This document shows positions 11,947 through 53,477 of a stretch of 64,000 nt of DNA, in pieces. The position numbers and the translations under genes were made by a program. The stretch is from positions 124,001 to 188,000 of the IMG/VR virus record IMGVR_UViG_3300037010_002844; one strand, given 5' to 3'. Within the stretch, counting starts at the first letter, position 1. The number at the start of each line of letters is the position of its first letter. The notes under the pieces were generated by a model that saw nothing but the letters and a program-made list of their open reading frames with translations, ran no database searches and was not told the DNA's origin.

Positions 11947-12220
11947 TCATCCTCTATGACGTAGAGTGCGCGACTCGTTCTTTTGGACGTCGCCTTCAGC
12001 TTGGAAACACAACCACGAACTTCTGCCGTCTTGTTGAATGGGTCGCTGTGTAGACACATGATGACAACACGGGCCGCGCCTTCAGGTGCTAGCTGGTGAG
12101 CGATCTCAAGCTGCCTGTGACATTGTCCATCACGGCATCGAGGGCGCCGGCAAAGTCCTGTCGACCGGCCTCAAGTTTTTCGCGAATGATCCTTCTGATC
12201 TGTCCAATGGTTGCCTTCAT
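11947..12220 (-). pseudogene. Leader-family small gene, apparently frameshifted
   Basis: MKATIGQIRRIIREKLE... stops at TAG 12089-12091 (43 aa); a protein-like continuation QLEIAHQLAPEGAARVVIMCLH..VSKLK runs in another frame to TGA 11947. Confidence 0.5.
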
Positions 12221-12221
12221 C

Positions 12222-12452
12222 TCAACCGCTCTTGCTCGGCTTCAGAAGCCCGACTTGAGACCCAAGAATGGCCCTCGAAAATTCTTCTTTTACTAGACGG
12301 TGTAGCTCCTGTTCGGTAATGCGAGATACACGCGGGTCGGACACAGACTCAGCGAGCGGTACGACCTCAGTGGGCACGAACCCCTCATCACGCAGCTGCA
12401 ATGCTGCCTCTCTGATCAGCTCGCGGAGCCTATTCGGAGAAATGAGTCGCAT
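12222..12452 (-). CDS. Small leader-family protein
   Basis: MRLISPNRLRELIREA, plus a second copy ITEQELHRLVKEEF. Confidence 0.7.
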   Translation of the reverse strand: MRLISPNRLRELIREAALQLRDEGFVPTEVVPLAESVSDPRVSRITEQELHRLVKEEFSRAILGSQVGLLKPSKSG

Positions 12453-12802
12453 CAGCCGTGCTTACCAACATGGGCCCAAGGATCCTTCGTCAAGGCCGTG
12501 CTTTGGGGATTGCCAAGCCACTTCATCACAGCATCGATGTTGGACTCGATCTGAGTGATTGCCCTCAATAGCTTCTGCGCCTTGTCCATGACGTCGCTGC
12601 CCGGGCCAGCATTCTGCAGCAACTCAGAGATCGCCTTCTTGGCACCCGCCTTGCCGAGCGCCTGTTTAGCAGACGATAGACTCCCGTGGAGCGCCTGCAG
12701 AGGAGCCTGGACCTTGCCTTGTTCCATCGTGATCTCGTCGAGCTCCTGCTCTTCAAGTGTCTCACGGATGATCTGACGGAGCTGCTTTTGGGTGATCTTC
12801 AT
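12452..12802 (-). CDS. Small leader-family protein (putative internal head protein)
   Basis: MKITQKQLRQIIRETLEEQELDE. Confidence 0.75.
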   Translation of the reverse strand: MKITQKQLRQIIRETLEEQELDEITMEQGKVQAPLQALHGSLSSAKQALGKAGAKKAISELLQNAGPGSDVMDKAQKLLRAITQIESNIDAVMKWLGNPQSTALTKDPWAHVGKHG

Positions 12803-12828
12803 CTGTTATTTCCCGCTGAATTTGACCA

Positions 12829-13041
12829 TCAGGGCGCGCGCGCGACAATGTCCTCAAATCGAGAACGCTCGAAAGGCCCGTCGCCCAGGGCTTCTGCAGT
12901 CTCAAACGTCATCCTGTTGACCATGTTCAAAACGCGAGACTTGAGCGTGGCCGCGAAGGCGGCCGACAGGGTGCTGATCAACTCAGCCCTGCCGGCTTCT
13001 TCCTTGATGATCTTACGCAGCTTTTGTGAAGTGATCTTCAC
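12829..13041 (-). CDS. Small leader-family protein
   Basis: GTG start, MKITSQKLRKIIKEE. Confidence 0.7.
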   Translation of the reverse strand: MKITSQKLRKIIKEEAGRAELISTLSAAFAATLKSRVLNMVNRMTFETAEALGDGPFERSRFEDIVARAP

Positions 13042-13054
13042 TGTCAGCTCTCAA

Positions 13055-16000
13055 TCACTGCTGGGTGATGTTGTTGGTGACCACGAAGTCCAAGGAGACG
13101 AACTCGATCGACTTGGTCGGCTGGACATAGATCTTACCGCGGATCGTGTTGTTCTCGATGTCCTGCTGCGTCGTGGTGCTGGAGTCGATAATAACCTTGA
13201 ACCGCTCGAGGCCCGCCTGAGCCTGGATGCGCTGCAGACGCGGGGTAACCGCGGCCGTGAAGCGGGCCAGGGTGGCAGCCCTGTTGGGCTCGAAAATGAT
13301 CGTCTGCGAGATGTCGCGGACCTGGCGGCGGATCTCGATCAGCAACCTGCGAACGTTGACGCGATCGAGAGCCGAGGCCGCGGCCTGCAGGGTCTTCTGA
13401 CCCCAAACCACCACGCCGCCCTTCGGGTTGGTGCCACCGACGGCAGTTCCCGGGAAGGCGACCAATGGGTTGATGGCGACATCGTAGAGTGCGTCCATGT
13501 TAGGCTTCGACAGCTGAACACGGGCCTCGAGGACAGTCGGCAACGCACCGCGGGTGACACCGGCTGGAGCAAACCAGGGGTGACCGACCGCATCATTCAA
13601 GGCCAGGGCGCCGAGGACCGCGACAGAAGGTGGCGCGACGACGTTGGTCTTGGTGTTAGGATCCGGCATCACCACGTCTGGGAAGTAGGCAGCGGCGAAG
13701 TTGTTGTCCATCGCGCGGTTGGCGAACGAGTTGGCGGTGTAGGTGACAGACGGCAGCTGCGAATCAGTGAAGACCTCAGTGTCAGTGTTGTCGAACTGCT
13801 CGATGTCCATGATGTAGAGAGCATCAAACCGTTCCTTGACCGCGTCAGCCGCTGCGTTGGTGACGATCGGGTGACGGATGCCAGGGATCGCCAGCAACTG
13901 GATGTCTGTGTTCACCACGTTCTTCATGATTTCCAGCGCCTTGGCGTAGGTCCGGACGTTTGAGCCCTGGTCCCTGCCACGGTTGGTGGCGTTCATGTCA
14001 GCCGTGATGGCTGCGTTGTTGATCTCTGCTGAGTCCTTGTCGAACAGTAGGATTCCGTCGAAGCCGCCTTGCAATAGGAAGCTGAACTTGGCGAACCGAC
14101 GGTTGGCCTGGACGAGATCGTCTGTCTTGAAGGCCCGCGTCTTGTTGGCATCGTTAGCCGTGATCGCACCACCACGCACGTACTGTGCTGAGACCCACTG
14201 CGTCGGGTCAGCCAACGTCGTGGATGCCGTGACGACCTGCAGGTTCTCGAGGGTGAACAGGTTGTTGCAGAACCTGTCGGCATCAATGATGCCCCACGCG
14301 CCGGTGTCGACCGCGCCGGTGTTGTCACCGACAGACACGTTCTGGTTGATCTCCGAGAAGTCCGGGAAGTACTTGGCAAACGACTTCAACGAAGCGTTCT
14401 TCAAGGTCGATGCATTCGGAGTCGCCAGGCTGGCCACGTGCTCGAACTGGACGCCCCAGTAGAGCAATGGGTTGACTTGGACCTTGGCGCCAGAACCTGC
14501 GGTGATGTTGGAACGCATCGGCAGCGGCGGCTCGATTGCGCGCTTCAGGTAGGTGGCCGCAGTCAAGCTGCCGTCAGTGACGCTTGTCAGAGGAGCAGAG
14601 CCAGAGGTGACGAGGTGCTCGACGCCGCGGAAGCCCATGGGCAGTGCCGTCGGATCGACGGTGCCGTTCTCAACCCCAAGATCGACCTCGACGCGGACGA
14701 GGTTCGACTGTGCCGGGTAGTTGCCGTCGAAGACGATCTTCTGGGCCGGCTCGGCGCGGTCGAAGTCGAAGAACACGTGAGCATCGCCGACAATCTTGGC
14801 GATGTAGCGATCCGAGCTCGGATCCAAGTTGACGCCGCGGAACTGTTCCAGCGGCTGCTGAGCAGCATCGCGGTCGTTCCAGTCGCGGAGAACCAGGTCG
14901 AAGGAACCAAACTTGTTGGCTGGGTCCGTCGACGGGGTGATGTTCTCGATCGAGATCTTGTATAGCGTCGAGACATTGGCGCCGGCATCCAGAGCATGCA
15001 ACCGGAAGAGATTGGAAGGCGAGCCACCAAACTTCTGCGAGATGATCCACGGGGACTTAGCGTGGCTGAAACGATCAGTGAAGGCCTCGTAGTTCGGGAC
15101 CGTGCTCGAACCAACGTTGCGTGCAAGAGAAGCTGTCGTCAGGAAGACAGCAGTTTCAGCACCCGGTTTGGGCGCCGTGGCCGCACCTGCACCTGACAGC
15201 GCGGAAACGAGGCCCGAGCCGGTGACCACTGCAGTAGCAGGGTGAACGTCCCAGGATGCATACAGGAAGTGACCAGCCTGCTGAATCTTGTAGGGATCCG
15301 TGTTCAGGACGTTGGCAAAGTAGTTCGGGCTCGTCATGTCGAACGAAGCCGTGATAACGTTCGGGTACAGCGGGTCCGTTCCCTGGTGACCGTTCAACAG
15401 CAGCACGAAGTCCGACTTTGCGACACCTGCGTCCATCAGGACGACGGTGCCGACCAAGCCACCGTGAGCGGTGCCATCGGTAGCAACGAGGTTCGACGGA
15501 GGGGCTGAAGAGTTACCGGCTGTCGAAGAAGACACGCGGAGGATAACGCCCGAGGGGGCCATCAGCATGCCTCGAACGATGACCGCGGCAGTGTCTGCAC
15601 CGGGAGTCGTTGAACCCAATCCTTGGATGCCGGCCGACGAGAAGATAGTCGAACCAGCAGACTCTGACATGAACGCGCCGAGGAAGTAGGCTCGACCCAG
15701 AGGAGAACCCAAAGCGCCCGAATTGGCGTACGGGTTACCGTCCAGCGTGCCATCTGAGGCGCGCGGCAACTGCTGTCCGACAGTGAAACCAGCGCCGTTG
15801 ACCGAGCCGTCATCATTCCGCGTGCGGCCATCGCCTGCGCCCAGGACCCTGAGATAGGTCACTGCCTGCGCCTTGCGCATCCACTCAGTGACAGCCAACG
15901 GGCCGAACTTCTTGCCGTCGGTCTTACCGAACTTGGCGTAGAAGTCATCGATCGTGCCGACGGTGACCGGGATGAATGCAGGTCCTTTCACTGCCGTGCC

Positions 16001-16102
16001 AATAACGCCTGCGGGAACACCGACTGGTTCCTGGGTCACTGGACCCGAAAGATCGATTTCCCTTGCCGTCACGCCAGCGCTTCCGAACTTTAGCTGTGCC
16101 AT
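13055..16102 (-). CDS. Tail sheath protein, paralogue B (gp18-like)
   Basis: SAGVTAREIDLS..GTAVKGPAFIP; C-terminal PWFAPAG..INPL..VWGQKTLQ..SALDRVNVRRLL..FEPN. Confidence 0.95.
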   Translation of the reverse strand: MAQLKFGSAGVTAREIDLSGPVTQEPVGVPAGVIGTAVKGPAFIPVTVGTIDDFYAKFGKTDGKKFGPLAVTEWMRKAQAVTYLRVLGAGDGRTRNDDGSVNGAGFTVGQQLPRASDGTLDGNPYANSGALGSPLGRAYFLGAFMSESAGSTIFSSAGIQGLGSTTPGADTAAVIVRGMLMAPSGVILRVSSSTAGNSSAPPSNLVATDGTAHGGLVGTVVLMDAGVAKSDFVLLLNGHQGTDPLYPNVITASFDMTSPNYFANVLNTDPYKIQQAGHFLYASWDVHPATAVVTGSGLVSALSGAGAATAPKPGAETAVFLTTASLARNVGSSTVPNYEAFTDRFSHAKSPWIISQKFGGSPSNLFRLHALDAGANVSTLYKISIENITPSTDPANKFGSFDLVLRDWNDRDAAQQPLEQFRGVNLDPSSDRYIAKIVGDAHVFFDFDRAEPAQKIVFDGNYPAQSNLVRVEVDLGVENGTVDPTALPMGFRGVEHLVTSGSAPLTSVTDGSLTAATYLKRAIEPPLPMRSNITAGSGAKVQVNPLLYWGVQFEHVASLATPNASTLKNASLKSFAKYFPDFSEINQNVSVGDNTGAVDTGAWGIIDADRFCNNLFTLENLQVVTASTTLADPTQWVSAQYVRGGAITANDANKTRAFKTDDLVQANRRFAKFSFLLQGGFDGILLFDKDSAEINNAAITADMNATNRGRDQGSNVRTYAKALEIMKNVVNTDIQLLAIPGIRHPIVTNAAADAVKERFDALYIMDIEQFDNTDTEVFTDSQLPSVTYTANSFANRAMDNNFAAAYFPDVVMPDPNTKTNVVAPPSVAVLGALALNDAVGHPWFAPAGVTRGALPTVLEARVQLSKPNMDALYDVAINPLVAFPGTAVGGTNPKGGVVVWGQKTLQAAASALDRVNVRRLLIEIRRQVRDISQTIIFEPNRAATLARFTAAVTPRLQRIQAQAGLERFKVIIDSSTTTQQDIENNTIRGKIYVQPTKSIEFVSLDFVVTNNITQQ

Positions 16103-16156
16103 CTTCTCGTAGCCTCTGCGTTGTAAGTATCAGATCGTTTTGCAATCCATACCGCG

Positions 16157-16202: not shown

Positions 16203-16225
16203 ATTTCACAGTTCGGATTTGTTCA

Positions 16226-40795: not shown

Positions 40796-42697
40796 TCAGA
40801 TGACGTTCATGTCCAACACTGTGACGGTCCCGTAGAAGTCCGTGCGGACCATCTTCTTGCCGTATCGGGTCATGACACCCTTGCGCGGCGTGAAGTCTTC
40901 CGGCGCAAAAATCGTCGGGGTGACGATCAGTGGCACGTACGGGGCGTACACGTAACCCGTCTCGAGATAGCTGCCGCCCTTGTAGCCGATCAGGATCTTG
41001 TTGCGGGGGAAGTACGGGTCCTTGTAGACCGTGAAGCGGTTGGACACCGTGCCGATCGCTTCCGCACCAATGGTAAACGGAGAGCCAACCTGTCCCTCGC
41101 CATCGATCGAGAACTTCGGCTTGTACAGCGTGGAAGCCTCGAGGATGGTGCAGACGTCCGGGCCGGTGACCATAAAGTTGGCCGAGCCGCGAAGGGTCTT
41201 ACGGTGAATGGTGTTCGCCACGTCGATGATCGTCTCGATCAACGTCTCGTACCACTCGCGGACCGTGCCCGTGAATTGCGGGCCGATACTCAAGGAGCTC
41301 GCCAGCTGCTGACGGTCACCCGTCAGCTTGTTCACGAAGCGGCCCGGCGAACGCGACCAGAAGAAGTTCGCGCCGTTGGCCTGAGAGACGAGATCATTCA
41401 AGATCTCGCGGTCGATCTCGAGAGCGATCTGCTCCGAAAGGATGCTCGTCAGCTCGACCTCAGCGTCCATCGAGTGGTACGCGTTGAGGTCCTGTGCGAG
41501 TTCAGGCGACCAGCGAGCGCGGAGCCTGCGGGTTGTCGCGGTGATTGCGATCGACTCGATCTTGATATCGATCTCGGGGATGGCCGGAGCCGGGGTCACC
41601 GAGAAGTCCGTCTCGAAGGAGGGAACAGTCAAGGTCGCGCCCGAGCCACCATCGACCATGAGGGCGTCGGCGATCGCCATCGAAACCTTCTGCGTCGCCG
41701 TGTTCAGCGTTGGAACCGAGCCGCCGTTCGACAGCTTCAGCACGAACTGAATGTGCGAACCATTCAGCGGGTTCGGCGTGAAGACCGAGCCGTTCCAGTC
41801 ACCGCGCTTGTTCAGACGACGGAGGTTCAGCAGGCCCTTGCCCGACTGGTAGGAGTCACCCCACTCAACGGCGCCGTTGTTCGCCTGGAAGCCGAAGAGA
41901 GCGATCTGCTCCGGAGCAAGGAAGTCACCCTTCGGGATCTGGGCTGCGATTGCCGCGACCGAGAGGTGGACGAAGGTTACATCCAGGAGGTTGCTGCCCA
42001 GGTCGACCTCAACCTGCGGATCGAACTGCAACATGCGGGCGTTGGTGCCCGAGAAGTCCGTGCTCGAGGCCACGATGCCGCCGGCGGCCCAAGCGTTGTT
42101 GGCACCGGTCCATGCGCCAAGGTCGAGGTTCGAACCCGAGACACCCAGCGAGGCCGAGTGCACCTTCGAGTAACCGACATTCACCAGGTCGTACATACCA
42201 CCCGTGGCGAGTGATCCAGACTGGATGCCCTTGCCGGTCGGGTTGTTGTAGATCGACTGGCCACGCTGGTAAGTCTCGTAGGCCGAGGAGTTACTAAGCT
42301 GCGAGCCAGCATCACCACCAACGTTCGAGCCGTAGGTGTAATCGAGATAGAAGATCAGACCAGACGGTAGGCTCATCGGCTGAATCGAGACAAGCTCGTT
42401 TGCAACGAGGCCACCGAAGACGCGGCGGACGATCGGGAAGGCGATGTTCGAGAAGCCCTGGATCTGACCCGAGGAAGCGACAGCGCCGCCGCCAGTGGAC
42501 AGGGAGTTCGACTCCTTCAGGACCTGGGCAGCCTGGTTCTCCAGGAGCTGCGCCATCGTCTCGCGCTTGAAACCGTCGAGACCGCGGAGCAAGCCAGTAC
42601 GGCTCCACTTCTCAACAAGACGGGCACGCTCAGCACCGACGTGCTTCTCGCGGATGCCCTGGGCCAGCTGGTCCAGTGTAAAAAACTTTGAAGACAT
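40796..42697 (-). CDS. Major capsid protein (T4 gp23-like)
   Basis: LLENQ, FPIVRRVF, VSIQPMSLPSGLIFYL, LRARWSPELAQDLNAYH, EIDREI, YAPYVPL, PRKGVMTRYG. Confidence 0.97.
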   Translation of the reverse strand: MSSKFFTLDQLAQGIREKHVGAERARLVEKWSRTGLLRGLDGFKRETMAQLLENQAAQVLKESNSLSTGGGAVASSGQIQGFSNIAFPIVRRVFGGLVANELVSIQPMSLPSGLIFYLDYTYGSNVGGDAGSQLSNSSAYETYQRGQSIYNNPTGKGIQSGSLATGGMYDLVNVGYSKVHSASLGVSGSNLDLGAWTGANNAWAAGGIVASSTDFSGTNARMLQFDPQVEVDLGSNLLDVTFVHLSVAAIAAQIPKGDFLAPEQIALFGFQANNGAVEWGDSYQSGKGLLNLRRLNKRGDWNGSVFTPNPLNGSHIQFVLKLSNGGSVPTLNTATQKVSMAIADALMVDGGSGATLTVPSFETDFSVTPAPAIPEIDIKIESIAITATTRRLRARWSPELAQDLNAYHSMDAEVELTSILSEQIALEIDREILNDLVSQANGANFFWSRSPGRFVNKLTGDRQQLASSLSIGPQFTGTVREWYETLIETIIDVANTIHRKTLRGSANFMVTGPDVCTILEASTLYKPKFSIDGEGQVGSPFTIGAEAIGTVSNRFTVYKDPYFPRNKILIGYKGGSYLETGYVYAPYVPLIVTPTIFAPEDFTPRKGVMTRYGKKMVRTDFYGTVTVLDMNVI

Positions 42698-42747: not shown

Positions 42748-44751
42748 TCACTTGATGCCAGCGAGGCGTGCCCATCGATCCGTCTCGTAGCCCTCATCGA
42801 GCTTAGTCGAGGCGGGGCGAGTTGCCCGTGAGGCCGAACCGATGACCTTGCGGCCGGCGGACTCTACCAGAGGACGGGAAGTGCCTGCCAAAGTCTTGGT
42901 CAGGCTCTCGTAGATGAGCTTGGCCTCACGGAGGCTCTTCGCCTCATCGAGCCGCTCGATGATCTCAGCCTTCTGCTTGCGCGAGAGTGCCTCGTTCTGG
43001 AGCAACTTGTTCGTGAAGACCAGCTTCGCGTTGAACAGATTCGTTTCTGCCAACTTGTTGCGGAGGTTTGCGTCGGCCTTTCCTTCCGCGGGCCGGATCG
43101 GGCTGCCATTCAGGCGAGCACCATTGCGAGACGCGACTTCCGCCAGCGTCTTCGTCATCTTCTTGACACGCATCACCGACTCGGTGAAGCGGCCGTGCAG
43201 GGCAGCGTGCTCCTTCTTTAGGGCAGCAACCTTACGTGAATCCTTCTTTGCCGTCGCACGAGTGGCTTCCTTCTTCAAGGCAGCAGCGCGGGTCTTAATC
43301 CTCTCCTGCAGGCGCTTCTCGAAGCCGACGCGACGCTTCAGCGCCTCCATCGTTGCACCTGGCTCGCGCGATTCCTTGCCAGACTCAGCGCCCGGACCCA
43401 TCGAAGCCGGAGCGACATTGCCGCCCGCCTCACGAGAATCCTCGGCCTGATCCATTCCGAAGTCCGTCTCATCAAGCTGGTCATCGTCCTGGTCGTCGTC
43501 GCCTTCATCCATCGTCAGTTCGCCATCGATCTCGTCGAGCTGGTCGTCATCCTCGTCACCCTCATCGGACTCCGTGGTGACCTCACCGTCGAGCCAGGGA
43601 TCGCCTTCCGACTTGCCGCCGCCGAACTGATCAATGACTGCGTCAACGCCGGCGCCCTTGGTGGACGGGACCGCATCCTCGCGGAGGGACTTCATCCGAG
43701 CAATCTCACGGCGGAGCATGCTCTCGTCAATTTCGACAATCGTGTCGTCGCTGAGCCGGCGTGACTCCATCTGGTCATCCTGACCCTGGTCCTCACCGCC
43801 CATGTCGAGGTCGCCAAGATCCATGTCCTCGCCACCCTCTTCATCGCCTTCTTCGCCGCCTTCTTCGCCGGCGCCGAGGTCAAGATCTTCACCGCCCTCG
43901 CCGTCTTCGTCTTCGCCAGTGATCAAGTCAACACCGACCGAATCAAGGTCAATCTCATCGGGCAGGCCAGTGAGCTTCAGCGTCACATCGCCTTCATTCA
44001 TCAAATCTTTGAGGCTCTTCTTCGACATCTTCTGCTCCTGGAGCTTGCTGAGTTCTTTGAAGTACGTTTCGAGTTTCGCTTCGTATGAACTCTTCCGTGC
44101 GGGATCCGTTACCGCCTCCTGCACGTAGTCATACATATTCTCCACTCGTGAAATCATATGAGTGATTTGCTCTGAGTAACCACGAGACTCCTTGACCACC
44201 TTATGGGCGGCCTTGAATGCTTGCAGTTGCTCACCGAGCCGGTAGAGACCGGCTTCGAGTTCCTTGATGATTCCTGACTTGGTTGCCTTGGCGACCGGCG
44301 TCAAGGCTTCCACGGATTCAAGGCTAAGCTCGTATTCATCTCCATCGACTGACGTAGGCTGCCCAAAGACAGGTGCAGGGACGGCTGCACCGATGGGGTC
44401 TGTCGCCAACGCATCAAGGTCGAGCGTGACCTTTCCTTCTGCATCAGGGACTGAGATGGCAGCCGCCGCCGTGCCACCATCGCCGGCTGCAGGAACCGCG
44501 CCGACGGGAGCAGTGTCAGTGACCAAGTCGCCCGGCTTGTCCGGGGTGCCCGGAGCACCTGAAACGATTTCAACGACTTCGACATCATCGTCATCATCGA
44601 AATCACCGTGCTCCTTGAGGAGCTCCTTCTCGATCAGATCCCGAATCCTCGGGGTCACTGCCTCGATCAGGGTACGCCTAGCATTATCCTCAGCGACTTC
44701 CTTCAATCGCTTGGCATCTGCTAGAGCCTCTTCGTACAGCTGCTTTGACAT
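42748..44751 (-). CDS. Prohead scaffold/core protein (gp22-like)
   Basis: Acidic low-complexity middle, coiled-coil, NLFNAKLVFTNKL..RWARLAGIK end; immediately upstream of the capsid gene. Confidence 0.8.
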   Translation of the reverse strand: MSKQLYEEALADAKRLKEVAEDNARRTLIEAVTPRIRDLIEKELLKEHGDFDDDDDVEVVEIVSGAPGTPDKPGDLVTDTAPVGAVPAAGDGGTAAAAISVPDAEGKVTLDLDALATDPIGAAVPAPVFGQPTSVDGDEYELSLESVEALTPVAKATKSGIIKELEAGLYRLGEQLQAFKAAHKVVKESRGYSEQITHMISRVENMYDYVQEAVTDPARKSSYEAKLETYFKELSKLQEQKMSKKSLKDLMNEGDVTLKLTGLPDEIDLDSVGVDLITGEDEDGEGGEDLDLGAGEEGGEEGDEEGGEDMDLGDLDMGGEDQGQDDQMESRRLSDDTIVEIDESMLRREIARMKSLREDAVPSTKGAGVDAVIDQFGGGKSEGDPWLDGEVTTESDEGDEDDDQLDEIDGELTMDEGDDDQDDDQLDETDFGMDQAEDSREAGGNVAPASMGPGAESGKESREPGATMEALKRRVGFEKRLQERIKTRAAALKKEATRATAKKDSRKVAALKKEHAALHGRFTESVMRVKKMTKTLAEVASRNGARLNGSPIRPAEGKADANLRNKLAETNLFNAKLVFTNKLLQNEALSRKQKAEIIERLDEAKSLREAKLIYESLTKTLAGTSRPLVESAGRKVIGSASRATRPASTKLDEGYETDRWARLAGIK

Positions 44752-46160: not shown

Positions 46161-46162
46161 GA

Positions 46163-47067: not shown

Positions 47068-47073
47068 CTTGCA

Positions 47074-47721
47074 TTACCTCTTGTACGACAGGATGTCGTT
47101 TAGAACCCGGTCAATCCGGTCGCTGCGGTTGAAGATCCGCTTCAGCTCGCCATCGCTTAGCTGGCGACCTTCTGGAATCATGAAGGCACCAGGCGTTGAA
47201 GGCTCAGAAACGTAGTCCCAACAGATCAACTGAAAGTCATCCTGAACCACGTAGTAGTCGCCATCCTTCCGAGTTGACCCCACGCCCCGCGAGGAGATAC
47301 CCAACTTGACGTTGCTCTCGGCCAACGACTGCAGGATCTGACCCGAGGGGGTATTCAGGATCTCGACGGTTCCCATCACTGTTCCGTTCTCGAGGTAGGC
47401 CTCACGGACAATGTGGGAAACGTTCTTCAGGTTGATGACCGAGGAATCAGGGTGATCGAGCTCACCAAGAGCACGATTCTCAATGATGAACTTCTGGTAG
47501 TTCCTGACCTCGCGCTCCAACACACGGAGCGGATAGATTCGGCCGTTCTGGTTTAGGGTGTCTGCCTTCTGCAGGATTCCCTTCATCAGGATCTTCTTGA
47601 CAGCGGGCACCTTGACAGCGTTGCCCTGAGAATCTTCAGTAATGGTCTCAGGCTTGACGACCTCGGTGACCAGCTTGTAGTCAAAGATGTCGTAGGTATT
47701 CAGTAGCCTCTGGTTGCTCAT
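47074..47721 (-). CDS. Prohead core protease (T4 gp21-like)
   Basis: NQNGRIYP, ALGELDHP, VSH, TPSGQI, LGISSRGVGS, DYVSEPSTPGA. Confidence 0.95.
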   Translation of the reverse strand: MSNQRLLNTYDIFDYKLVTEVVKPETITEDSQGNAVKVPAVKKILMKGILQKADTLNQNGRIYPLRVLEREVRNYQKFIIENRALGELDHPDSSVINLKNVSHIVREAYLENGTVMGTVEILNTPSGQILQSLAESNVKLGISSRGVGSTRKDGDYYVVQDDFQLICWDYVSEPSTPGAFMIPEGRQLSDGELKRIFNRSDRIDRVLNDILSYKR

Positions 47722-47725
47722 GACA

Positions 47726-48580
47726 TCACTCCTCACCGTTTAGTTCGGTACTCAACTTGGTGTAAAGCATGAAGCGAGTCACTGTCTCATCATTGACCAC
47801 ATCGAGGGTCTCGGAGATCAGGCGCTCTCGGGCCTCGTTCAGCTTTTCATTGACGTACTTGTTAGCGTTTGCTGCAGTGTACTCGTCCATTCGTTGCAAC
47901 AGGTCAGACTTGATCTCTGCCAGTTTCTTGTGAATGACGGTCGGATCATCGTGAGCGGCCGAAAAGACATACGCCTTGACGAGTGACTTCTGATCATCGT
48001 TCAGGACACCAGCGTACTTCTCGTTCAACTTCTTTGTCATGACCTTCATCAACAGGCGAGCAGTTCCGTTAGACTCTTCACTGATGACATGATCATCAGC
48101 CTCTGGTCGTTCAGACACCAACCACTGGACCAACTGGTCCTCGTAGGTCGCCATCCTCGACAAGTCCTTGTCGGTCGATCGCCAATCATTGAGCAGCGTC
48201 TGCACGGTGGCATACATCCTGTACTCATTGATCTGTTGATCATAGAAGTTGTCATCTTTGATCGAGTAGTTGATGTGCTTGATGAGCAGCGACTTCTCGC
48301 GGTCCAGAGTCTGGATGTCGTGAGATCGGGCCGCCGAGCGCGCCTCGTTCAGGATGTTAGCAGCGACTGCCTCTGACGTCACCTTCGTCTTAATCAACGA
48401 ATTGACGAGCCTAAACTCTCGGTACAGCTCAGAACCAGGCTTGAAGTGCTTTCGGAGGATCTTCAACGCCACGGCAGACTTCTTCTGGTTGCCCTCGACG
48501 AGGGCGGTCGAAATGGTGCGGACAAGGAACTCGTAGAGTAGTCCAGCATTACGCTTCTTGTTGTGGCCCTTGCTGCTCAT
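47726..48580 (-). CDS. Helical head-assembly-region protein
   Basis: HNKKRNAGLLYEFL; lies between portal and protease. Confidence 0.7.
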   Translation of the reverse strand: MSSKGHNKKRNAGLLYEFLVRTISTALVEGNQKKSAVALKILRKHFKPGSELYREFRLVNSLIKTKVTSEAVAANILNEARSAARSHDIQTLDREKSLLIKHINYSIKDDNFYDQQINEYRMYATVQTLLNDWRSTDKDLSRMATYEDQLVQWLVSERPEADDHVISEESNGTARLLMKVMTKKLNEKYAGVLNDDQKSLVKAYVFSAAHDDPTVIHKKLAEIKSDLLQRMDEYTAANANKYVNEKLNEARERLISETLDVVNDETVTRFMLYTKLSTELNGEE

Positions 48581-51500
48581 GACTCGTCATCCTCGTTGTC
48601 ATCATCGATGATAAGTACATCGCCTTCGTTAATGGCGCTGCCTGTCAGACCCGGTTCGATCGACTCATCAATCTCGATGTTGATCTCTTGGTCCTCTTTT
48701 ATCAAACCATTCTTCGATCCGCGCTCACCAGGGAACTTCTTTTCCCAACTTAGCAACGCAGCGACCACGTCGCCAGGAAGCCGCTGCTGACGTGCGACGC
48801 TTTCGCCGAATGGGTCGCTGACGACAGACTTCAAGAAGTCGGTATCGTAAGGATCCTCCATCGCTCGATTGTCAGTCGAAGTCATCTTCCTGAAGTCAGG
48901 CATGTGCGTCTTAGACGGTCCGTGCGTCAAGTGACGGCTACGGTTGTAGAGCACGCGGTCAAGCTGCTTCTGAGCCTTGACTGGAATCTCGACGTCCTTC
49001 ATGGCGCCGACGCGGAGCCCAAATGTCTCATCGTCATCATTGTCGTCAGCTGACGTCAGGAGCTGAACACCAGGCGTGGTCTCCTCTTCTGGTTCCTCAC
49101 CTGCGTTTTCCTCGGGAGGCGTCTCTTCTCCGCCTGCGGGTTCCTCACCGCCTCCACCTTCATCGCCGCCGCCAAAGAGGTCTTCGCCTCCCCCGCCGCC
49201 ATCCCCTCCAGCACCCGCGCCGGACTCGATGGCTGCGTCAACGACCTTATCTTTCATGCGATTCTTGTCGATCTGCTTGCACTCCTGATCGTTGAGGCCC
49301 CAGATCTCCTTGCGGACAAAGTCCTTATCAATGAAGCCTTCAGGGGCCGAGCCGCCGATCTCAAACTTGGCACGCCACAGTTCTAGCTTCTGTTGCTGTG
49401 CGACAGTCGACGGGTTGGACAGATGCAACGTAAAGTTCTGCAGATCATCACCGTCATACCCGTGTGCATAGAGGTGGATGATCGCCAGCTTGTTGAGCTC
49501 GGCAAGGATCGTCTTCTGAATGACAGCAATGGTACGCGAGAACCTGATGTCCTCCTGCGCCAACGTGGCCTTGCTGCTAAGCATCTCATCGTAACCCAAG
49601 TAGGCGCGTGGGATCTTCAGAGCAGCAAACAGCTTCTTCTGAATGTAGGCCACGTCCTCGACGGCGGCAGTGTTCTGGCCTCCCGCGAGGGTTTCAATGC
49701 GAGTTCCAGACTCTTGGCCACGAACTGGGATGAAGTAGTCCTCATCGACGCTCTGAAACGCAAATATTAGTCCTACACCACCACCACCACCATGAGGTGA
49801 TTGTGCACCTTTCGCAGCATTTTCACCACCCACGGCAAGATTGTGCCATCGATCAACGGTAACACTGTACACATCTTCAGTTGTATCGATGAGCTCAACA
49901 GAAATGACGACGTGGTTGTTCGCACCGTCAGAAGCAACAACGCCGGTGTCAACGTTGTTGACGTACTGACGACCCAAGGCCGCAGGATGGTGCGCAGCCC
50001 AAACTGCCTTCCAGTTAAGGTAATCGGCGATGATGAACTTACCGACGACGTTTTTATGCAGCGATTTCGCGAGATCGTGAGCCAGATGAGCGTTCGTTGC
50101 TGCGTAGAGCTTCATGAACGTTACGTCGGACTTCAACCGTCTCAGGAACGCATCGAGCCCCTCGAACCTACGAAGCGATCTGATGACGTTGATAACGTAG
50201 ACCTGGCACTCAGGCGACCAAACATAGCGCATGTTCTGTCGGGCACGCTCCCTTCGTTCAGGGTCAGCCCACATCGTAGACATCGCTTCAGAACGTTTGA
50301 CGTAATGCTCAGCGTTCGTTATCAACTGCAGGTTGCCAGTTGAGTTGTTGAGCTTGTCAAAGTTGACGTGATGAATTGTCTTTCCCTGCTGTGAGATGTG
50401 CCCGTTCCGATAGACCTCGAGCCCGAACGCATGAGCCGCGATCAACTCGTGGGTAAAGATGCGTGTTCCGAACGATGGATCGAGCACCTTTTCGTAACAG
50501 TGCTTGTCAACTTCAGAAACTTCAGCGCCTGACATCGGTGCATATGTAACGTGCAACGGCATCAAGCTGTCGCCCGAACGTAGATCCTTCGCTTTAACGT
50601 GAGAACCATCACGAAGCATCATCCTATGTTCAGGTGTGACATTGATGACGCCGCCGTCGTCCAGCGTCACCCTGACAAACTGTTTCGTAGTACCTGACTT
50701 CCCGGCCCAGATCACCTTGCCGGGTACCAACCTACCCCCCGCTTCGAGATCAAGGGAATAAGTCTCATGGTCTCGGCGCCCTTCATTCCACTCCTTGACT
50801 AGCTCATCGATCCGCAGCATCCTACCATCCAACAATGGTATCTGAACGTTCGCTGCGAAGCACAGTGGATTGTACCTGAGGTCCACACGACCAGAAGAGC
50901 GATCAATGACCTGATTCGTCCTGAGGTTCTTCCTCTGCTCTTCAACATAAAGAGGCACGTCCTGCGCTGGAACGTTGGCAACGTCGATGTAGAAGACGCG
51001 GCGTTCAGGTGCCCTGACGACGCGGTACACCAACATTGCATCTTCGATGAGGATCAACTGACGCCAAATGCGGCGGGCAGGCTCAATGATCGATGACCCG
51101 TAAGGCAAGAACATGTCGTTGCCCAAGAGCCGAAAGTGAGTGATCTCCCAGTTCTCGAGGACTCGATTACCTAGGGTGACCCAGCGATACCTGACCGCAA
51201 ACGGATCGTCACGATCGTAGTTCTCTTCGCGCTCGATCTCGTTGACAGGGATCGGGAACGCTGAGACGACTCCGTACGTTGGAGAAACGTCATTATAGAG
51301 GAAGAAGTCGCCGTACTTAACAAGATTGCGCGCCCAGGATCGCAGGTTGAACTCGGTGTTCAACGTATTGTAGAAAAGGTCCTCGAGCACCTCGCGAATC
51401 TTCTCATTGTCCGAGTAAATGTGGAGGACGCGGCCTTTCTCATCCTGTGCACACGTTTCGTCGGCATAGATGTCAAGAGCAGCCGCGATCTCAGGAGTAT

Positions 51501-53088
51501 TGTGCGAGATCACACTATCGGTGGCAAAGTTCTTGTACCCGTCAACGGTGAGGTCGTAGAGAGGGATCTCACCGACATACTCAACGGAAACTACCTTACA
51601 GTTGTTGTAAGTCTCCTGAAAGTCACTAAACTTCTTGAAGCCATTCTGCGACAACCTGGAGATAATCGTGTTCTTGTTGGCGCCAAGCTTTTCGGCGAGA
51701 CGAGGCAACGTCACGCTGGGTGTATATGCATCACAGATCTGTTGGAACGTCAGTGAATTACCGTTCGAACCTCGTGGACGACCGCCCTTTCGGACGCTCT
51801 TAATCTGATTGACGGTCACTTCCTCGTCGTGATACCCCATTGTTGAACGCAACTCTGTCCACGACATCCGGGCGCGGCGGGCCAAAAACTTGTCAAGTAC
51901 GTTGACAGTGCAACCGAGCTTAATGCACAAAGAACGCTTCGTGTCACCAGCAGTCATCGAAGACTTCAATAGCTCGAGGCTCAAGTCCCGTGTCAGTAGA
52001 CCGGGTCGGTTGTTGATCATAGAATCAGCTTGACCGCCAGCATATGCCGCAACAAATTTATTGAACGTTGAGAATCCGTGGGTCGCCAATCGTTCATAGA
52101 TCAGGTTCCATGTGACATCAAGAGCATTTGCAATCGCCGGCATGCTGAAACCAACACGTTCAGCAGTCTCTAGGATTCGAGCAAAAGTCACATCCCTGCG
52201 AGCGCCAGGAGCATTGTCACGCATCCGAGCTGCATGGTTCTTCTTGAACTCTTCGATCCACTCACGGTTTTCGGGTGCCCACTTCACCCCGTTGTTGATC
52301 GCGGCGTGGTAACTGTCATGGGCAGACTTCGTCATGATCCTGAGATTTTCAGGACGATTATCAGTCTTAATGAAGTTGATGTGGTGGACAACCTCATCTT
52401 CGTTGAGCTGACGACCGGCAACCCACTCAGCGATCAGTTGGTGCTCTTTGGTCCAACCGCGGAACCTATCGTCCATCGTGTAGATCCACGAGTAGCCAAG
52501 GGTGCCTTCTTTGGCATCAGCAAAGATGTCTTTGCGGTAGAAGGGCATCATTGCATCGCCGGGTTTCAGGTCCTCAACACGACGGTATGTACCGTCACGA
52601 AGCATCAGTCGATGTTCCGGTGATGCAACAATCTCTTTTCCATTATCAAATTTGATCTTCCAGGCACTATCGACACAGGTCTGACGAGCCTGTTTACCGA
52701 ACGCCGGAACGATGCGCTTCAAATTGTGATCGTACGAATAGACAATGAAGATGTGATCCGGATTTTTCTCACACTCTTGCGCTAGCTCACCTATAGTCTT
52801 GAAACCATCTGAGGTTGCGATCTTAGTGTCAATCGCAAGTGAATACTCCATTTCTTGAAAGTCCTGATAGCGCATCAAGCGCTCGCTCAGGTTGTAGGCA
52901 TTTGCCGTGATGGTCGCGTAGGTCGGCGCCAGCGACTTCTGAAAGAGCAACGTGCCTGACGACTTAGTCTTGTCAGCGACCGCGATCGTCGTGTCGGCGG
53001 TGCGGATCTTCTTCTTGATGACAGGACCACTTCGAAACAGTCGCGTCAGTCGTCGGAAAAGGCTTTGAGGTGCTTCTTTTTTTGCCAT
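48577..53088 (-). CDS. Portal protein (T4 gp20-like) with two inteins; ~685 aa after splicing
   Basis: PEIAAALDIYADE, KYGDFF, LIEDAMLVYRVVRAPERRVFYIDV, EDYFIPVRG, KKLFAALKIP, QEDIRFSRTI. Confidence 0.95.
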   Translation of the reverse strand: MAKKEAPQSLFRRLTRLFRSGPVIKKKIRTADTTIAVADKTKSSGTLLFQKSLAPTYATITANAYNLSERLMRYQDFQEMEYSLAIDTKIATSDGFKTIGELAQECEKNPDHIFIVYSYDHNLKRIVPAFGKQARQTCVDSAWKIKFDNGKEIVASPEHRLMLRDGTYRRVEDLKPGDAMMPFYRKDIFADAKEGTLGYSWIYTMDDRFRGWTKEHQLIAEWVAGRQLNEDEVVHHINFIKTDNRPENLRIMTKSAHDSYHAAINNGVKWAPENREWIEEFKKNHAARMRDNAPGARRDVTFARILETAERVGFSMPAIANALDVTWNLIYERLATHGFSTFNKFVAAYAGGQADSMINNRPGLLTRDLSLELLKSSMTAGDTKRSLCIKLGCTVNVLDKFLARRARMSWTELRSTMGYHDEEVTVNQIKSVRKGGRPRGSNGNSLTFQQICDAYTPSVTLPRLAEKLGANKNTIISRLSQNGFKKFSDFQETYNNCKVVSVEYVGEIPLYDLTVDGYKNFATDSVISHNTPEIAAALDIYADETCAQDEKGRVLHIYSDNEKIREVLEDLFYNTLNTEFNLRSWARNLVKYGDFFLYNDVSPTYGVVSAFPIPVNEIEREENYDRDDPFAVRYRWVTLGNRVLENWEITHFRLLGNDMFLPYGSSIIEPARRIWRQLILIEDAMLVYRVVRAPERRVFYIDVANVPAQDVPLYVEEQRKNLRTNQVIDRSSGRVDLRYNPLCFAANVQIPLLDGRMLRIDELVKEWNEGRRDHETYSLDLEAGGRLVPGKVIWAGKSGTTKQFVRVTLDDGGVINVTPEHRMMLRDGSHVKAKDLRSGDSLMPLHVTYAPMSGAEVSEVDKHCYEKVLDPSFGTRIFTHELIAAHAFGLEVYRNGHISQQGKTIHHVNFDKLNNSTGNLQLITNAEHYVKRSEAMSTMWADPERRERARQNMRYVWSPECQVYVINVIRSLRRFEGLDAFLRRLKSDVTFMKLYAATNAHLAHDLAKSLHKNVVGKFIIADYLNWKAVWAAHHPAALGRQYVNNVDTGVVASDGANNHVVISVELIDTTEDVYSVTVDRWHNLAVGGENAAKGAQSPHGGGGGVGLIFAFQSVDEDYFIPVRGQESGTRIETLAGGQNTAAVEDVAYIQKKLFAALKIPRAYLGYDEMLSSKATLAQEDIRFSRTIAVIQKTILAELNKLAIIHLYAHGYDGDDLQNFTLHLSNPSTVAQQQKLELWRAKFEIGGSAPEGFIDKDFVRKEIWGLNDQECKQIDKNRMKDKVVDAAIESGAGAGGDGGGGGEDLFGGGDEGGGGEEPAGGEETPPEENAGEEPEEETTPGVQLLTSADDNDDDETFGLRVGAMKDVEIPVKAQKQLDRVLYNRSRHLTHGPSKTHMPDFRKMTSTDNRAMEDPYDTDFLKSVVSDPFGESVARQQRLPGDVVAALLSWEKKFPGERGSKNGLIKEDQEINIEIDESIEPGLTGSAINEGDVLIIDDDNEDDES
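49753..50862 (-). mobile_element. Intein 2 in portal (370 aa, HNH-containing, Cys1...Phe-Gln/Ser+1)
   Basis: YNPL|CFAANVQIPLLDG, block B VTPEHRMM, IHHVNFDKLNN, VYSVTVDRWHNL..IFAFQ|SVDEDYF. Confidence 0.88.
51499..52842 (-). mobile_element. Intein 1 in portal (448 aa, HNH-containing, Ser1...His-Asn/Thr+1)
   Basis: EMEY|SLAIDTKI, ASPEHRLM, VHHINFIKTDNRPENL, LYDLTVDGYKNF..SHN|TPEI. Confidence 0.92.
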
Positions 53089-53165
53089 GATGTTCGCCCG
53101 ACTATTTCAGTCGCGGCTCAGGGTTAATAGTAAGGTTCACTGCTGCAGCGTATACGGTAGCGTGA

Positions 53166-53477
53166 TCAAACGTCCCCTTCACCCTTCACGGGCTTCAAAG
53201 AAACCTTCTTTGGTTCGACCTTCTTCTTCTCGACGTAGGATCCAGGCGTACTTACCATGTCCTCGAGAATCTTTTCCATCTGTGCAAGATGAGGCGTCAG
53301 CGCATTGATCATCGGCCCGTTGGCTGACTTCTGAAATACCTCGACCGCCGCCAACAGCTTGGAGGCGCCATTGACGACTTCACGAATTGATGCATGGTCG
53401 ACGGCCTCGTTGACCGAGGAAGACAGTTCCTCAGCAATGATCTTCCGAAGACGTGGTAGGGTAATCTTGTTGCTCAT
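53166..53477 (-). CDS. Small leader-family protein
   Basis: MSNKITLPRLRKIIAEELSSSVNE. Confidence 0.8.
   Translation of the reverse strand: MSNKITLPRLRKIIAEELSSSVNEAVDHASIREVVNGASKLLAAVEVFQKSANGPMINALTPHLAQMEKILEDMVSTPGSYVEKKKVEPKKVSLKPVKGEGDV

What the first reader, a model, noticed from the sequence alone, without database searches (positions are those of the whole stretch)
11947..53477. Dispersed family of small proteins sharing an N-terminal MK(I/L)TxxxLRxIIxEE leader: candidate capsid-targeting/cargo system
Seen: unrelated small ORFs begin with the same amphipathic basic-then-Glu leader: MKITSQKLRKIIKEE (13041), MKITQKQLRQIIRETLEE (12802), MRLISPNRLRELIRE with a second internal copy (12452), MKATIGQIRRIIREKLE (12220), MKLTSKLLKKIIEEE (45632), KMSRQQLKAIVKE (46160), MSNKITLPRLRKIIAEE (53477), and weaker MLRFRHLIKALVKE (10826). 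What follows the leader differs completely. Known: T4 internal proteins carry a short N-terminal capsid-targeting sequence removed by gp21 after (I/L)xE, and a gp21-like protease is encoded here. Inference: a modular tag that loads interchangeable cargo proteins into the prohead for injection (e.g. anti-defence factors), with a four-gene cassette between sheath and tube.
Basis: partly seen in the sequence, partly recalled or inferred. Interest (0 to 1): 0.8.

Follow-up and report, generated by a model that had tools for sequence, protein, structure and literature searches.

The report
Shared phage leader: likely capsid-loading tag
Eight otherwise unrelated small proteins of this uncultured giant T4-like phage start with the same 14-residue peptide. 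Hundreds of unrelated proteins in related phages carry it too. It most likely acts like the T4 capsid-targeting sequence, a tag that loads proteins into the forming head and is then cut off, but no experiment has tested this.

Summary
Eight minus-strand ORFs start with M-K-(I/L)-T-x-x-Q-L-(R/K)-x-I-I-x-E. A profile trained only on other contigs finds seven of them plus one internal copy, and nothing else in six frames. Their bodies are unrelated to each other.

The window is part of a 309-kb uncultured far-T4-like phage. It encodes a gp23-type capsid protein, a gp20 portal, and a gp21-type S77 protease with the catalytic His and Ser intact.

In relatives I found 482 distinct leader proteins in 297 unrelated body clusters. 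Tandem arrays reach 11 genes, and both sides of the tail-tube gene are insertion hotspots. Conservation stops sharply after Glu14/15 and acts on the protein, not the DNA.

The leader ends in hydrophobic-hydrophobic-x-Glu. That matches the T4 gp21 cleavage rule (L/I-x-E) and the invariant VLKE at the predicted capsid-protein maturation site.

Best reading: a prohead-targeting propeptide removed by the head protease, a new sequence variant of the T4 CTS/internal-protein system. Three window members are conserved head-module genes, probably core proteins. The other five sit beside the tube gene at sites that vary between relatives.

Packaging, cleavage, injection and any anti-defence role are untested. 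Most bodies are acidic, unlike the basic T4 internal proteins (from memory).

The parts
12829..13041 (-). Leader ORF 1 of the sheath-tube cassette, 70 aa, GTG start. The leader reads VKITSQKLRKIIKE as translated (GTG initiates as Met); the body is a singleton.
   Evidence: (43.0 bits)
12452..12802 (-). Leader ORF 2 of the cassette, 116 aa, leader MKITQKQLRQIIRE. Only 3 homologues were found among 5.8 billion proteins.
   Evidence: (43.1 bits)
12222..12452 (-). Leader ORF 3 of the cassette, 76 aa, degenerate leader MRLISPNRLRELIRE. Its start overlaps the stop of ORF 2.
12279..12326 (-). Second, internal leader copy inside ORF 3 (SRITEQELHRLVKEEF), with no Met.
   Evidence: 22.1 bits
12089..12220 (-). 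Leader ORF 4 of the cassette, 43 aa, leader MKATIGQIRRIIRE.
   Evidence: 22.6 bits
10548..10826 (-). Weak leader ORF downstream of the tube gene, 92 aa from the Met, MLRFRHLIKALVKE. Glu sits at residue 14, as in canonical leaders.
   Evidence: cluster C16 with homologues in L081 and L116
45381..45632 (-). Conserved head-module leader protein, 83 aa (family C2, MKLTSxLLKKIIEEE), with an acidic middle. By position and size it is a candidate gp67-like core protein.
   Evidence: 34.3 bits
45687..46160 (-). Conserved head-module leader protein, 157 aa (family C0, ...SRQQLKAIVKECLVEIL). A candidate gp68-like core protein.
   Evidence: 18.1 bits
53166..53477 (-). Conserved leader protein between terminase and portal, 103 aa (family C1). 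The AlphaFold model shows a leader helix (residues 7-23) followed by a helical hairpin.
   Evidence: 32.1 bits
47074..47736 (-). gp21-type prohead serine protease (Peptidase_S77). The residues matching T4 His85 and Ser140 are conserved. This is the presumed leader-removing enzyme.
42748..44751 (-). Scaffold-like coiled-coil protein just upstream of the capsid gene, 667 aa. It is enriched in [LI]xE motifs and has an internal leader-like site, SLKDLMNE, at residues 242-253 (about 44028-43993).
40796..42697 (-). gp23-type major capsid protein, 633 aa. The predicted maturation site VLKE-S lies at residues 59-63 (about 42523-42509), inside the invariant LLENQAAQVLKE.
11412..11903 (-). gp19-type tail tube gene. 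Both of its flanks are insertion hotspots for leader genes in relatives.
13055..16102 (-). Tail sheath paralogue 2, the upstream border of the cassette. No terminator-like site lies between it and the tube gene.

Best explanation
The 14-residue N-terminal peptide M-K-(I/L)-T-x-x-Q-L-(R/K)-x-I-I-(K/R)-E is a portable propeptide. It directs whatever protein it is fused to into the assembling prohead, binding either the scaffolding core or the inner face of the shell. The phage's gp21-type S77 protease then cuts it off after the Glu. [quoted passage not shown]

Three leader proteins (83, 157 and 103 aa) are conserved head-module genes, probably core components. The other leader genes sit in variable cassettes on either side of the tail-tube gene and are accessory passengers. 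Some passengers may stay in the head and enter the next host with the DNA; others may be cut up and expelled.

Shown: the tag exists, is modular, is conserved at protein level and ends in a protease-type motif. The protease is present and its catalytic residues are intact.

Inferred: targeting, cleavage and the fate of the bodies.
For: 1. N-terminal specificity and modularity. The motif is essentially confined to N-termini on the coding strand in the window. The same holds in 80 related loci, where 119 of 131 hits lie next to a start codon, and in the complete 484-kb phage LR756508.1, where 20 of 21 do. I found 482 distinct leader proteins in 297 unrelated body clusters. Information content is high at positions 1-14, moderate at 15, and near zero from position 17.

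2. Protein-level constraint. Synonymous sites vary and the upstream regions are unrelated. Internal copies without a Met exist.

3. Protease logic. The leader ends in I-I-x-E. T4 gp21 cuts after L/I-x-E, and the T4 CTS is the first 10 residues of IPIII (PMC9026906). T4 IPII and IPIII start MKTYQEFIAE, gp22 starts MLKEQLIAE and gp24 starts MAKINELLRE. The window protease is S77 with the T4 His85 and Ser140 equivalents conserved.

4. Independent substrate. The capsid-protein segment homologous to the T4 gp23 cleavage region carries the invariant LLENQAAQVLKE, followed by variable, indel-prone residues, in 45 of the 48 distinct sequences aligned; the three most distant differ in it. It has the same hydrophobic-hydrophobic-K-E ending as the leader.

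5. Motif distribution. The motif [ILV][ILV][KR]E is enriched in the scaffold-like protein and in leader-protein bodies, but is absent from the mature capsid protein and 13 other structural proteins.

6. Genomic position. Conserved members lie between protease and scaffold/capsid genes, and between terminase and portal. The variable members lie inside the late sheath-tube operon with no terminator. In LR756508.1, 18 of 20 leader genes lie within 75 kb around the capsid gene.

7. Hypervariable cassettes, as at T4 IP loci (the T4 pattern is from memory of Repoila 1994 and Comeau & Krisch 2005). The sheath-tube gap is at most 200 bp in 34 relatives and 0.4-3.9 kb in 38; 20 of those 38 carry leader genes. 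Arrays of 10-11 genes occur after the tube gene.

8. A few passengers are enzymes: YkuD, an AAA_33 kinase-like protein and HAD-like DUF2608 on canonical leaders, and an HD domain on a weak one. This recalls packaged T4 Alt.
Against: - There is no direct evidence of packaging or cleavage. No cultured close relative or virion proteome exists.
- The residue after the Glu is usually Glu (45%) or Ala (26%). In the T4 sites I read it is Ala or Ser.
- The leader shows no sequence homology to the T4 CTS beyond the initial MK and the final I-x-E. It is longer and strongly basic.
- Bodies are mostly acidic (median pI 4.9; 74% below pI 6), unlike the basic T4 IPs (from memory). Acidic proteins fit poorly beside packed DNA.
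- The enrichment of cleavage-type motifs in bodies and scaffold could simply reflect helical periodicity.
- Many cassettes flank tail genes rather than head genes.
- A bacterial chromosomal membrane protein carries nine similar internal repeats. The peptide type is therefore not unique to phage heads.
Confidence: 0.55

Rival explanations
1. The leader is a shared binding helix for a partner that is not part of the virion, such as a host protein, a phage chaperone, a degradation or regulatory factor, or nucleic acid. The leader proteins would then be intracellular accessory factors that are never packaged.
For: The leader is a basic amphipathic helix. AlphaFold models a helix at residues 7-23, and the hydrophobic moment is 0.60. 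Bodies are acidic and mostly lack known domains. A bacterial membrane protein carries nine similar repeats, so the peptide could be a generic interaction motif. Some arrays sit near DNA-metabolism genes.
Against: This reading does not explain the strict N-terminal position or the obligatory ending in hydrophobic-hydrophobic-x-Glu. It does not explain the match to the predicted capsid-protein maturation site, or the conserved members inside the head module next to the protease and scaffold genes. It also leaves unexplained why accessory genes sit inside late structural operons. The hydrophobic moment is not significantly above shuffles (6.8% of shuffles reach it).
Confidence: 0.17
2. The leader proteins are all auxiliary scaffold or core proteins of a very large head. 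The leader would be a co-assembly helix, and the bodies would be cut to pieces and expelled during maturation. Nothing would be delivered to the host.
For: Bodies are acidic, like the T4 core proteins gp22, gp67 and gp68 (gp67 sequence). Cleavage-type motifs are enriched within the bodies (z = 4.5 to 9.2), and a second R-L-L-x-E site often follows the leader. Three families are conserved head-module genes. The genome is 309 kb, so the head needs a large core.
Against: A scaffold role fits poorly with 238 singleton bodies out of 297 clusters. It also fits poorly with presence/absence variation between close relatives, and with enzyme passengers such as YkuD, a kinase-like protein, HD and HAD domains. 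This is a sub-case of the best explanation, with the same targeting and cleavage but a different fate, rather than a true alternative.
Confidence: 0.15
3. The leader loads proteins into the tail, either the tube lumen or around the tape measure. This would resemble the N-terminal signals of cargo in extracellular contractile injection systems.
For: In the window and many relatives the variable cassettes lie directly between the sheath and tube genes or just after the tube gene.
Against: The conserved leader families lie in the head module. The leader ends in a head-protease motif shared with the capsid protein. From general knowledge, not tested here: phage tail tubes are filled by the tape measure protein, and cargo signals of contractile injection systems are longer, disordered and not conserved in sequence.
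Confidence: 0.06
4. The conserved element works at the nucleic-acid level, as a translation-initiation enhancer, an RNA structure or a recombination site. The peptide would be a by-product.
For: In arrays the first 45 nt are about 80% identical while both flanks are at 25-31%, which is random level. Such islands could mediate cassette exchange.
Against: In the window, third-codon positions are 38% identical against 56% for positions 1 and 2, and only 46% of identical residues use the same codon. The peptide is conserved between phages of 40% and 55% GC. Internal copies without a start codon keep the peptide. Recombination at the leader is a likely secondary consequence, not the primary function.
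Confidence: 0.03
5. The leader proteins are one old paralogous family whose bodies have diverged beyond recognition. Only the first helix of a common fold stays conserved.
For: Many bodies are small and predicted to be helical (for one family).
Against: Body lengths range from about 30 to over 450 residues, and some contain unrelated Pfam domains (YkuD, AAA_33, HD_4, DUF2608). Conservation drops abruptly, not gradually, after residue 15. The weak DEK_C/DUF5760 hit for one ORF does not recur in 74 other leader proteins.
Confidence: 0.04

Closest known systems
T4 capsid-targeting sequence (CTS) of the internal proteins IPI/IPII/IPIII and Alt, removed by the gp21 prohead protease
   Same: - A short N-terminal peptide shared by otherwise unrelated proteins.
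- It starts with MK and ends in I-x-E, the gp21 cleavage rule.
- A gp21-family S77 protease and gp20, gp23 and gp19 homologues are present in the same genome.
- The bearer genes are dispersed and variable between relatives (the T4 IP-locus pattern is from memory).
- A few bearers are enzymes, like Alt.
   Different: - 14 residues rather than 10, and strongly basic (T4 MKTYQEFIAE has net charge -1).
- No detectable sequence homology to the T4 CTS.
- Far more conserved across a deep clade: protease identity falls to about 43% while the leader stays nearly identical.
- 8 bearers in this 64-kb window, 20 in one complete relative, and arrays of up to 11, against four known in T4.
- Bodies are mostly acidic rather than basic.
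- Function is untested here.
T4 prohead core proteins gp22, gp67 and gp68, and the vertex protein gp24 (short N-terminal propeptides cut by gp21)
   Same: - gp22 starts MLKEQLIAE and gp24 starts MAKINELLRE.
- The window's 83-aa and 157-aa leader proteins lie in the protease-scaffold-capsid gene block and match gp67 (80 aa) and gp68 (141 aa) in size.
- Both sets are acidic.
- The scaffold-like protein's N-terminus resembles those of immuto and of T4 gp22.
   Different: - No significant sequence similarity to gp67, gp68 or gp22 (no Pfam or PHROG hits).
- The gene order differs: in T4, genes 67 and 68 precede gene 21.
- A peptide deformylase gene is inserted in the block here.
Propeptide-directed loading and Glu-specific processing of inner-body and ejection proteins in phiKZ-like giant phages (phiKZ gp175, SPN3US gp245)
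   Same: Many head-internal proteins are processed after Glu by a gp21-related protease. Their propeptides can hold redundant cleavage sites (PMC9026906). Here a second R-L-L-x-E site often follows the leader.
   Different: From memory, those propeptides are long and not a single conserved tag. This phage belongs to the T4 lineage, with gp23, gp20 and gp19 homologues, and is not phiKZ-like.
Scaffold-derived and encapsulin cargo-loading peptides (P22 scaffold C-terminal coat-binding helix; encapsulin targeting peptides)
   Same: A short, portable peptide suffices to load unrelated cargo into an HK97-fold shell. In P22 the peptide is a basic helix that binds the coat protein electrostatically (from memory, not tested here).
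   Different: Those tags are C-terminal and are not removed by a protease. No sequence relationship is apparent.

Membership tests
T4-type CTS / internal-protein system | A short N-terminal peptide shared by proteins whose remaining sequence is unrelated | tested here: met
   The 8 window ORFs have unrelated bodies. In relatives there are 297 body clusters. Conservation ends at residue 15-16.
T4-type CTS / internal-protein system | The peptide ends in the prohead-protease cleavage motif (L/I-x-E in T4) | tested here: met
   All 8 window leaders end in [IV]-x-E. Glu14 was part of my selection rule in relatives. However, the window-independent matrix and the profile search recover the same ending. 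The T4 rule is taken from PMC9026906.
T4-type CTS / internal-protein system | The genome encodes a gp21-family (Peptidase S77) prohead protease with its catalytic residues | tested here: met
   PF03420 at E = 6e-25. PDB 5jbl at E = 5e-14. The T4 His85 and Ser140 equivalents are conserved.
T4-type CTS / internal-protein system | Sequence homology of the tag to the T4 CTS (MKTYQEFIAE) | tested here: not met
   Only the initial MK and the final I-x-E are shared. Length and charge differ. The tag is therefore an analogue or a very distant variant, not the same sequence family.
T4-type CTS / internal-protein system | The tag is necessary and sufficient for incorporation into the prohead core | not testable with these tools
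   This needs leader-reporter packaging assays.
T4-type CTS / internal-protein system | The tag is removed by the protease, and mature proteins are present in virions and ejected with the DNA | not testable with these tools
   No isolate or virion proteome exists for the clade.
T4-type CTS / internal-protein system | Bearer genes lie in hypervariable loci that differ between close relatives | tested here: met
   The sheath-tube gap is at most 200 bp in 34 loci and 0.4-3.9 kb in 38, with leader genes in 20 of those. Arrays of 9-11 genes follow the tube gene in some relatives and none in most.
T4-type CTS / internal-protein system | Small basic passenger proteins (typical of the T4 IPs, though not strictly defining) | tested here: not met
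   Median body pI is 4.9, and only 9% are above pI 9.
Pfam DEK_C (PF08766) / DUF5760 (PF19064) | A match above the family gathering score that recurs across leader proteins | tested here: not met
   One ORF gives E = 0.005 and 0.011, below the cut-offs. Neither family appears among the 25 most frequently matched when 74 leader proteins are scanned at E up to 1.
Cargo signals of extracellular contractile injection systems | An N-terminal signal on payloads encoded beside tail-like structural genes and loaded into the tube | not tested
   Only the gene position beside the sheath and tube genes fits. The head-module members and the protease-type ending argue against it.

The most novel reading that the evidence does not exclude
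The leader is a universal head-loading and ejection tag for a large, wholly uncultured branch of T4-related giant phages. The hundreds to thousands of unrelated proteins that carry it would then be a previously unseen repertoire of virion-delivered effectors. These would include enzymes such as an L,D-transpeptidase, a kinase-like protein and phosphohydrolases. They would be organised in islands of up to 11 genes that swap cassettes by recombination at the leader. A sequence profile alone would then predict the injected proteome of phages that cannot be grown.
Probability: 0.3. Interest if true: 0.8.

Novelty: new variant of a known kind. Interest (0 to 1): 0.66.

Why it matters
If the tag works as proposed, one 14-residue profile would identify the head-internal, and possibly injected, proteins of a large group of uncultured giant phages. 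Such proteins are normally found only by virion proteomics of cultured phages.

The tag marks several hundred unrelated small proteins, which are obvious candidates for early-acting host-takeover or counter-defence factors. It also shows where these genomes exchange such genes, namely the flanks of the tail-tube gene.

It would extend the T4 capsid-targeting principle, so far documented mainly in T-even phages, to a deep and diverse lineage with a different and much better conserved tag. It would also offer a second natural tag for loading foreign proteins into phage heads.

If the tag instead proves to be a co-assembly helix of sacrificial core proteins, it still says how very large T4-type heads build their cores.

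Tried and rejected
- Pfam and PHROGs on all eight leader ORFs gave nothing above threshold. The weak DEK_C/DUF5760 hits to one ORF did not recur in 74 other leader proteins, so I dropped that lead.
- tblastn of the 103-aa and 83-aa proteins against 50,697 GenBank phage records found no match even at E = 1. No close cultured relative exists. Only a shorter leader-like N-terminus turned up in Flavobacterium phage immuto, and clear leaders in the uncultured LR756508.1.
- BLASTP of the scaffold-like protein against T4 gp22 was not significant. Its assignment rests on position, composition and homology to the immuto protein upstream of the capsid gene.
- The ESM Atlas look-up of the 103-aa protein returned only unnamed viral clusters.
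- A full-text search for the motif strings found no paper.
- Sequencing runs: only DNA runs from sediment and microbial-mat metagenomes hold the region. The cassette is identical in the contigs that span it, in three of the four runs. I did not run an RNA-only search. This gives no expression or polymorphism data.
- The genome-contig scan for the leader found 8 stretches on 6 contigs, all in MAGs of unrelated phyla and probably mis-binned phage DNA. No host could be inferred.
- The leader profile against 1.84 billion representatives found 12,014 proteins at E up to 0.001. The listed top hits are multi-copy proteins, and one is a bacterial membrane protein with nine internal repeats. The count is therefore an upper bound and not a census of phage leaders.
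- A single read-through of the 103-aa family into the portal ORF (L025) is too isolated to argue for a portal association.
- The hydrophobic moment of the consensus leader is not significantly above shuffles.

Full report
**What the window is.** Almost all long ORFs lie on the minus strand. The window is 100% identical to part of a 309-kb IMG/VR contig. It encodes these T4-type proteins:
- large terminase (53518-55146)
- gp20 portal interrupted by intein/HNH sequences (48577-53088)
- gp21-type Peptidase_S77 prohead protease (47074-47736)
- gp23-type major capsid protein (40796-42697)
- gp19-type tail tube protein (11412-11903)
- two tandem sheath paralogues

The capsid protein is at most 48% identical to anything in 50,697 GenBank phage records. 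The nearest are the uncultured 484-kb phage LR756508.1, Microcystis phage Mel-JY01, Flavobacterium phage immuto and Rhodothermus phage RM378. This is therefore an uncultured, distant member of the T4 lineage with a giant genome. It was found in sediment and microbial-mat metagenomes.

**Checking the observation.**
- A core regex hits nine times in all six frames. All hits are on the coding strand, and eight lie 7-16 residues from an ORF start.
- Among 70 genes this gives 8 N-terminal hits against 1 internal hit (p = 1.3e-9). Shuffled proteins give 0.018 on average.
- Because that regex was derived from the data, I trained a position matrix on 254 leaders from other contigs. Scored at start codons, the background mean is -44 bits.
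- The weak 10826 ORF scores lower, but it keeps Glu at residue 14 and has homologues with the same N-terminus.
- The bodies are unrelated to one another.

**The constraint acts on the peptide, not the DNA.**
- Among the window's leaders, third-codon positions are 38% identical against 56% for positions 1 and 2. Identical residues use the same codon only 46% of the time, and the upstream regions are unrelated.
- The peptide is kept in phages of 55% and 40% GC.
- It is also kept in internal copies that lack a start codon.

**Relatives.**
- The protease and tube proteins each find several hundred related IMG/VR contigs. In 80 loci around the protease, 119 of 131 motif hits lie next to a start codon and 116 are on the coding strand.
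- Three window proteins belong to conserved, syntenic families. The 83-aa and 157-aa proteins lie between the protease and the scaffold/capsid genes. The 103-aa protein lies between the terminase and the portal.
- Everything else is variable. Across all fetched loci I catalogued 482 distinct leader proteins in 297 body clusters, of which 238 are singletons.
- With one representative from each of 53 clusters, information content is high for positions 1-14 (consensus M-K-I-T-k-r-Q-L-R-r-I-I-K-E), moderate at 15 (Glu or Ala), and about zero from position 17.
- The 116-aa cassette protein has only three homologues among 5.8 billion proteins.
It hits only 8 stretches in 596 Gb of cellular genomes, all in MAGs.
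- Of 119 loci selected by the leader pattern alone, 62 encode portal, terminase or protease homologues at 25-79% identity. The tag is thus better conserved than the structural proteins.
- In the complete genome of LR756508.1, 20 of 21 core-motif hits are N-terminal, and 18 lie within 75 kb around the capsid gene.

**Variable loci.**
- In 72 relatives with both sheath and tube genes, the genes are adjacent (gap at most 200 bp) in 34 and separated by 0.4-3.9 kb in 38. Of those 38, 20 hold one to three leader genes, often beside GIY-YIG-like ORFs.
- Downstream of the tube gene, most relatives have no leader gene, but some have arrays of 9-11.
- In those arrays the first 45 nt are about 80% identical while both flanks are at random level. 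The leader probably also serves as a recombination handle.
- In the window the four cassette genes are tightly packed or overlapping. No terminator-like site separates the sheath and tube genes, so they are most likely expressed with the late structural genes.

**Why a capsid-targeting propeptide is the best reading.**
- T4 gp21 cuts after L/I-x-E, and the first 10 residues of IPIII suffice to target foreign proteins into the head (PMC9026906; PMC3012670).
- From the T4 genome I confirmed the N-termini: MKTYQEFIAE for IPII and IPIII, a related start ending in I-T-E for IPI, MLKEQLIAE for gp22 and MAKINELLRE for gp24.
- The present leader has the same layout: it starts with Met-Lys, runs through an amphipathic stretch, and ends in Ile-x-Glu.
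- The window protease aligns with T4 gp21 and keeps His85 and Ser140.
- The capsid protein gives an independent check. The segment that aligns with the T4 gp23 cleavage region contains LLENQAAQVLKE. It is invariant in 45 of the 48 distinct sequences aligned and is followed at once by variable, indel-prone residues. Its ending, V-L-K-E, is of the same type as the leader's I-I-K-E.
- The motif [ILV][ILV][KR]E occurs three times in the scaffold-like protein (0.3 expected). It occurs 46 times in leader-protein bodies (12.7 expected). It does not occur at all in the mature capsid protein or in 13 other structural proteins. Helical periodicity could contribute to this enrichment.
- The 667-aa protein upstream of the capsid gene is homologous at both ends to the protein in the same position in immuto. 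It also carries an internal leader-like site.

**What does not fit neatly.**
- The leader is longer and far more basic than the T4 CTS and shows no sequence homology to it.
- The residue after the Glu is often another Glu.
- Bodies are mostly acidic (median pI 4.9). The T4 internal proteins are basic (from memory).
- By analogy with T4, many of these proteins may be core components that are degraded and expelled rather than injected.
- A minority carry enzyme domains: YkuD, AAA_33 and DUF2608/HAD on canonical leaders, and HD_4 on a weak one. That would make sense for delivered proteins.
- AlphaFold models the 103-aa family as a leader helix (residues 7-23, pLDDT about 72) followed by a confident helical hairpin. 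This fits a separable tag but is not informative about function.

**Wider distribution and caveats.**
- A profile of 121 leaders finds 12,014 representative proteins at E up to 0.001 among 1.84 billion.
- The top hits hold two or more copies. One of them (P0018) translates exactly from its contig as a single ORF of three leader-body units, with what look like translated ribosome-binding sites at the junctions. It is probably a set of fused array genes.
- Another (P0048) is a bacterial chromosomal membrane protein with nine internal repeats of a similar peptide. Similar peptides therefore exist outside phages, and the count is an upper bound.

**Novelty.** The principle is known from T4: a short, cleavable N-terminal tag on diverse head-internal proteins encoded in variable loci. 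New here are the tag itself, its depth of conservation, and the scale (eight bearers in 64 kb, 20 in a complete relative, arrays of 11, about 300 unrelated body families in a small sample). It also occurs in an uncultured giant-phage lineage. I found no paper containing the motif. I rate it a new variant of a known kind.

**Confidence.**
- About 0.95 that the tag is a real, modular, protein-level feature.
- About 0.55 that it is a head-targeting propeptide removed by the S77 protease.
- About 0.3 that a substantial share of the passengers are delivered into the host.

Noticed in passing
window 38403-38774 (-): ARAGORN calls a phage-encoded tmRNA gene with tag peptide ANDNGVAPLALAA.
   Followed up: no
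window 48577-53088 (-): The gp20-type portal ORF is 1503 aa because it carries intein splicing domains and an HNH endonuclease.
   Followed up: no
window 13055-16102 and 16226-19240 (-): Two tandem tail-sheath paralogues of about 1000 aa each sit side by side, with a terminator-like hairpin between them at 16183-16165.
   Followed up: no
window 46163-46666 (-): A peptide deformylase gene sits inside the head-assembly block, between the protease and the leader-bearing core-like proteins. It is at the same place in at least some relatives.
   Followed up: partly
window 24079-24966 (-), 8244-8957 (-): A patatin-like phospholipase lies among the tail/baseplate genes. A NUDIX hydrolase lies next to the putative tape-measure gene.
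   Followed up: no
L114:2815-3741, L123:2072-2863, L099:4165-4899 and others: In several relatives the sheath-tube gap also holds GIY-YIG-like homing-endonuclease ORFs (N-termini such as MYGIIYVITNN...KYVG) next to the leader genes. I identified them by eye only.
   Followed up: no
L306:409-1695 (P0018); also P0005, P0008, P0034: These are single ORFs made of two or three leader-body units. The junctions look like translated Shine-Dalgarno sequences (…EGK-MKIT…). They are probably array genes fused by loss of stop codons, and if real they would be natural polyproteins.
   Followed up: partly
L307:4001-6883 (P0048): A bacterial chromosomal membrane protein, flanked by CTP synthase and CorC/CNNM genes, has nine internal repeats of a leader-like peptide (LTxxDLRxIIxEEL). 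Its function is unknown.
   Followed up: partly
L025:4343-9130: In one relative the 103-aa leader family reads through in frame into the portal ORF, giving 1596 aa. This is a single case and could be a lost stop codon or a sequencing error.
   Followed up: partly
L162 (MW353176.1) 113144-113902, 123311-123532, 111140-111610; L287 81481-81900: The cultured Flavobacterium phage immuto has a shorter version of the leader (MKKSQLRQIIKE, MKKSQIVKAVQE, MKLDLLKKLIKE) on at least four hypothetical proteins. That makes it a possible experimental system.
   Followed up: partly
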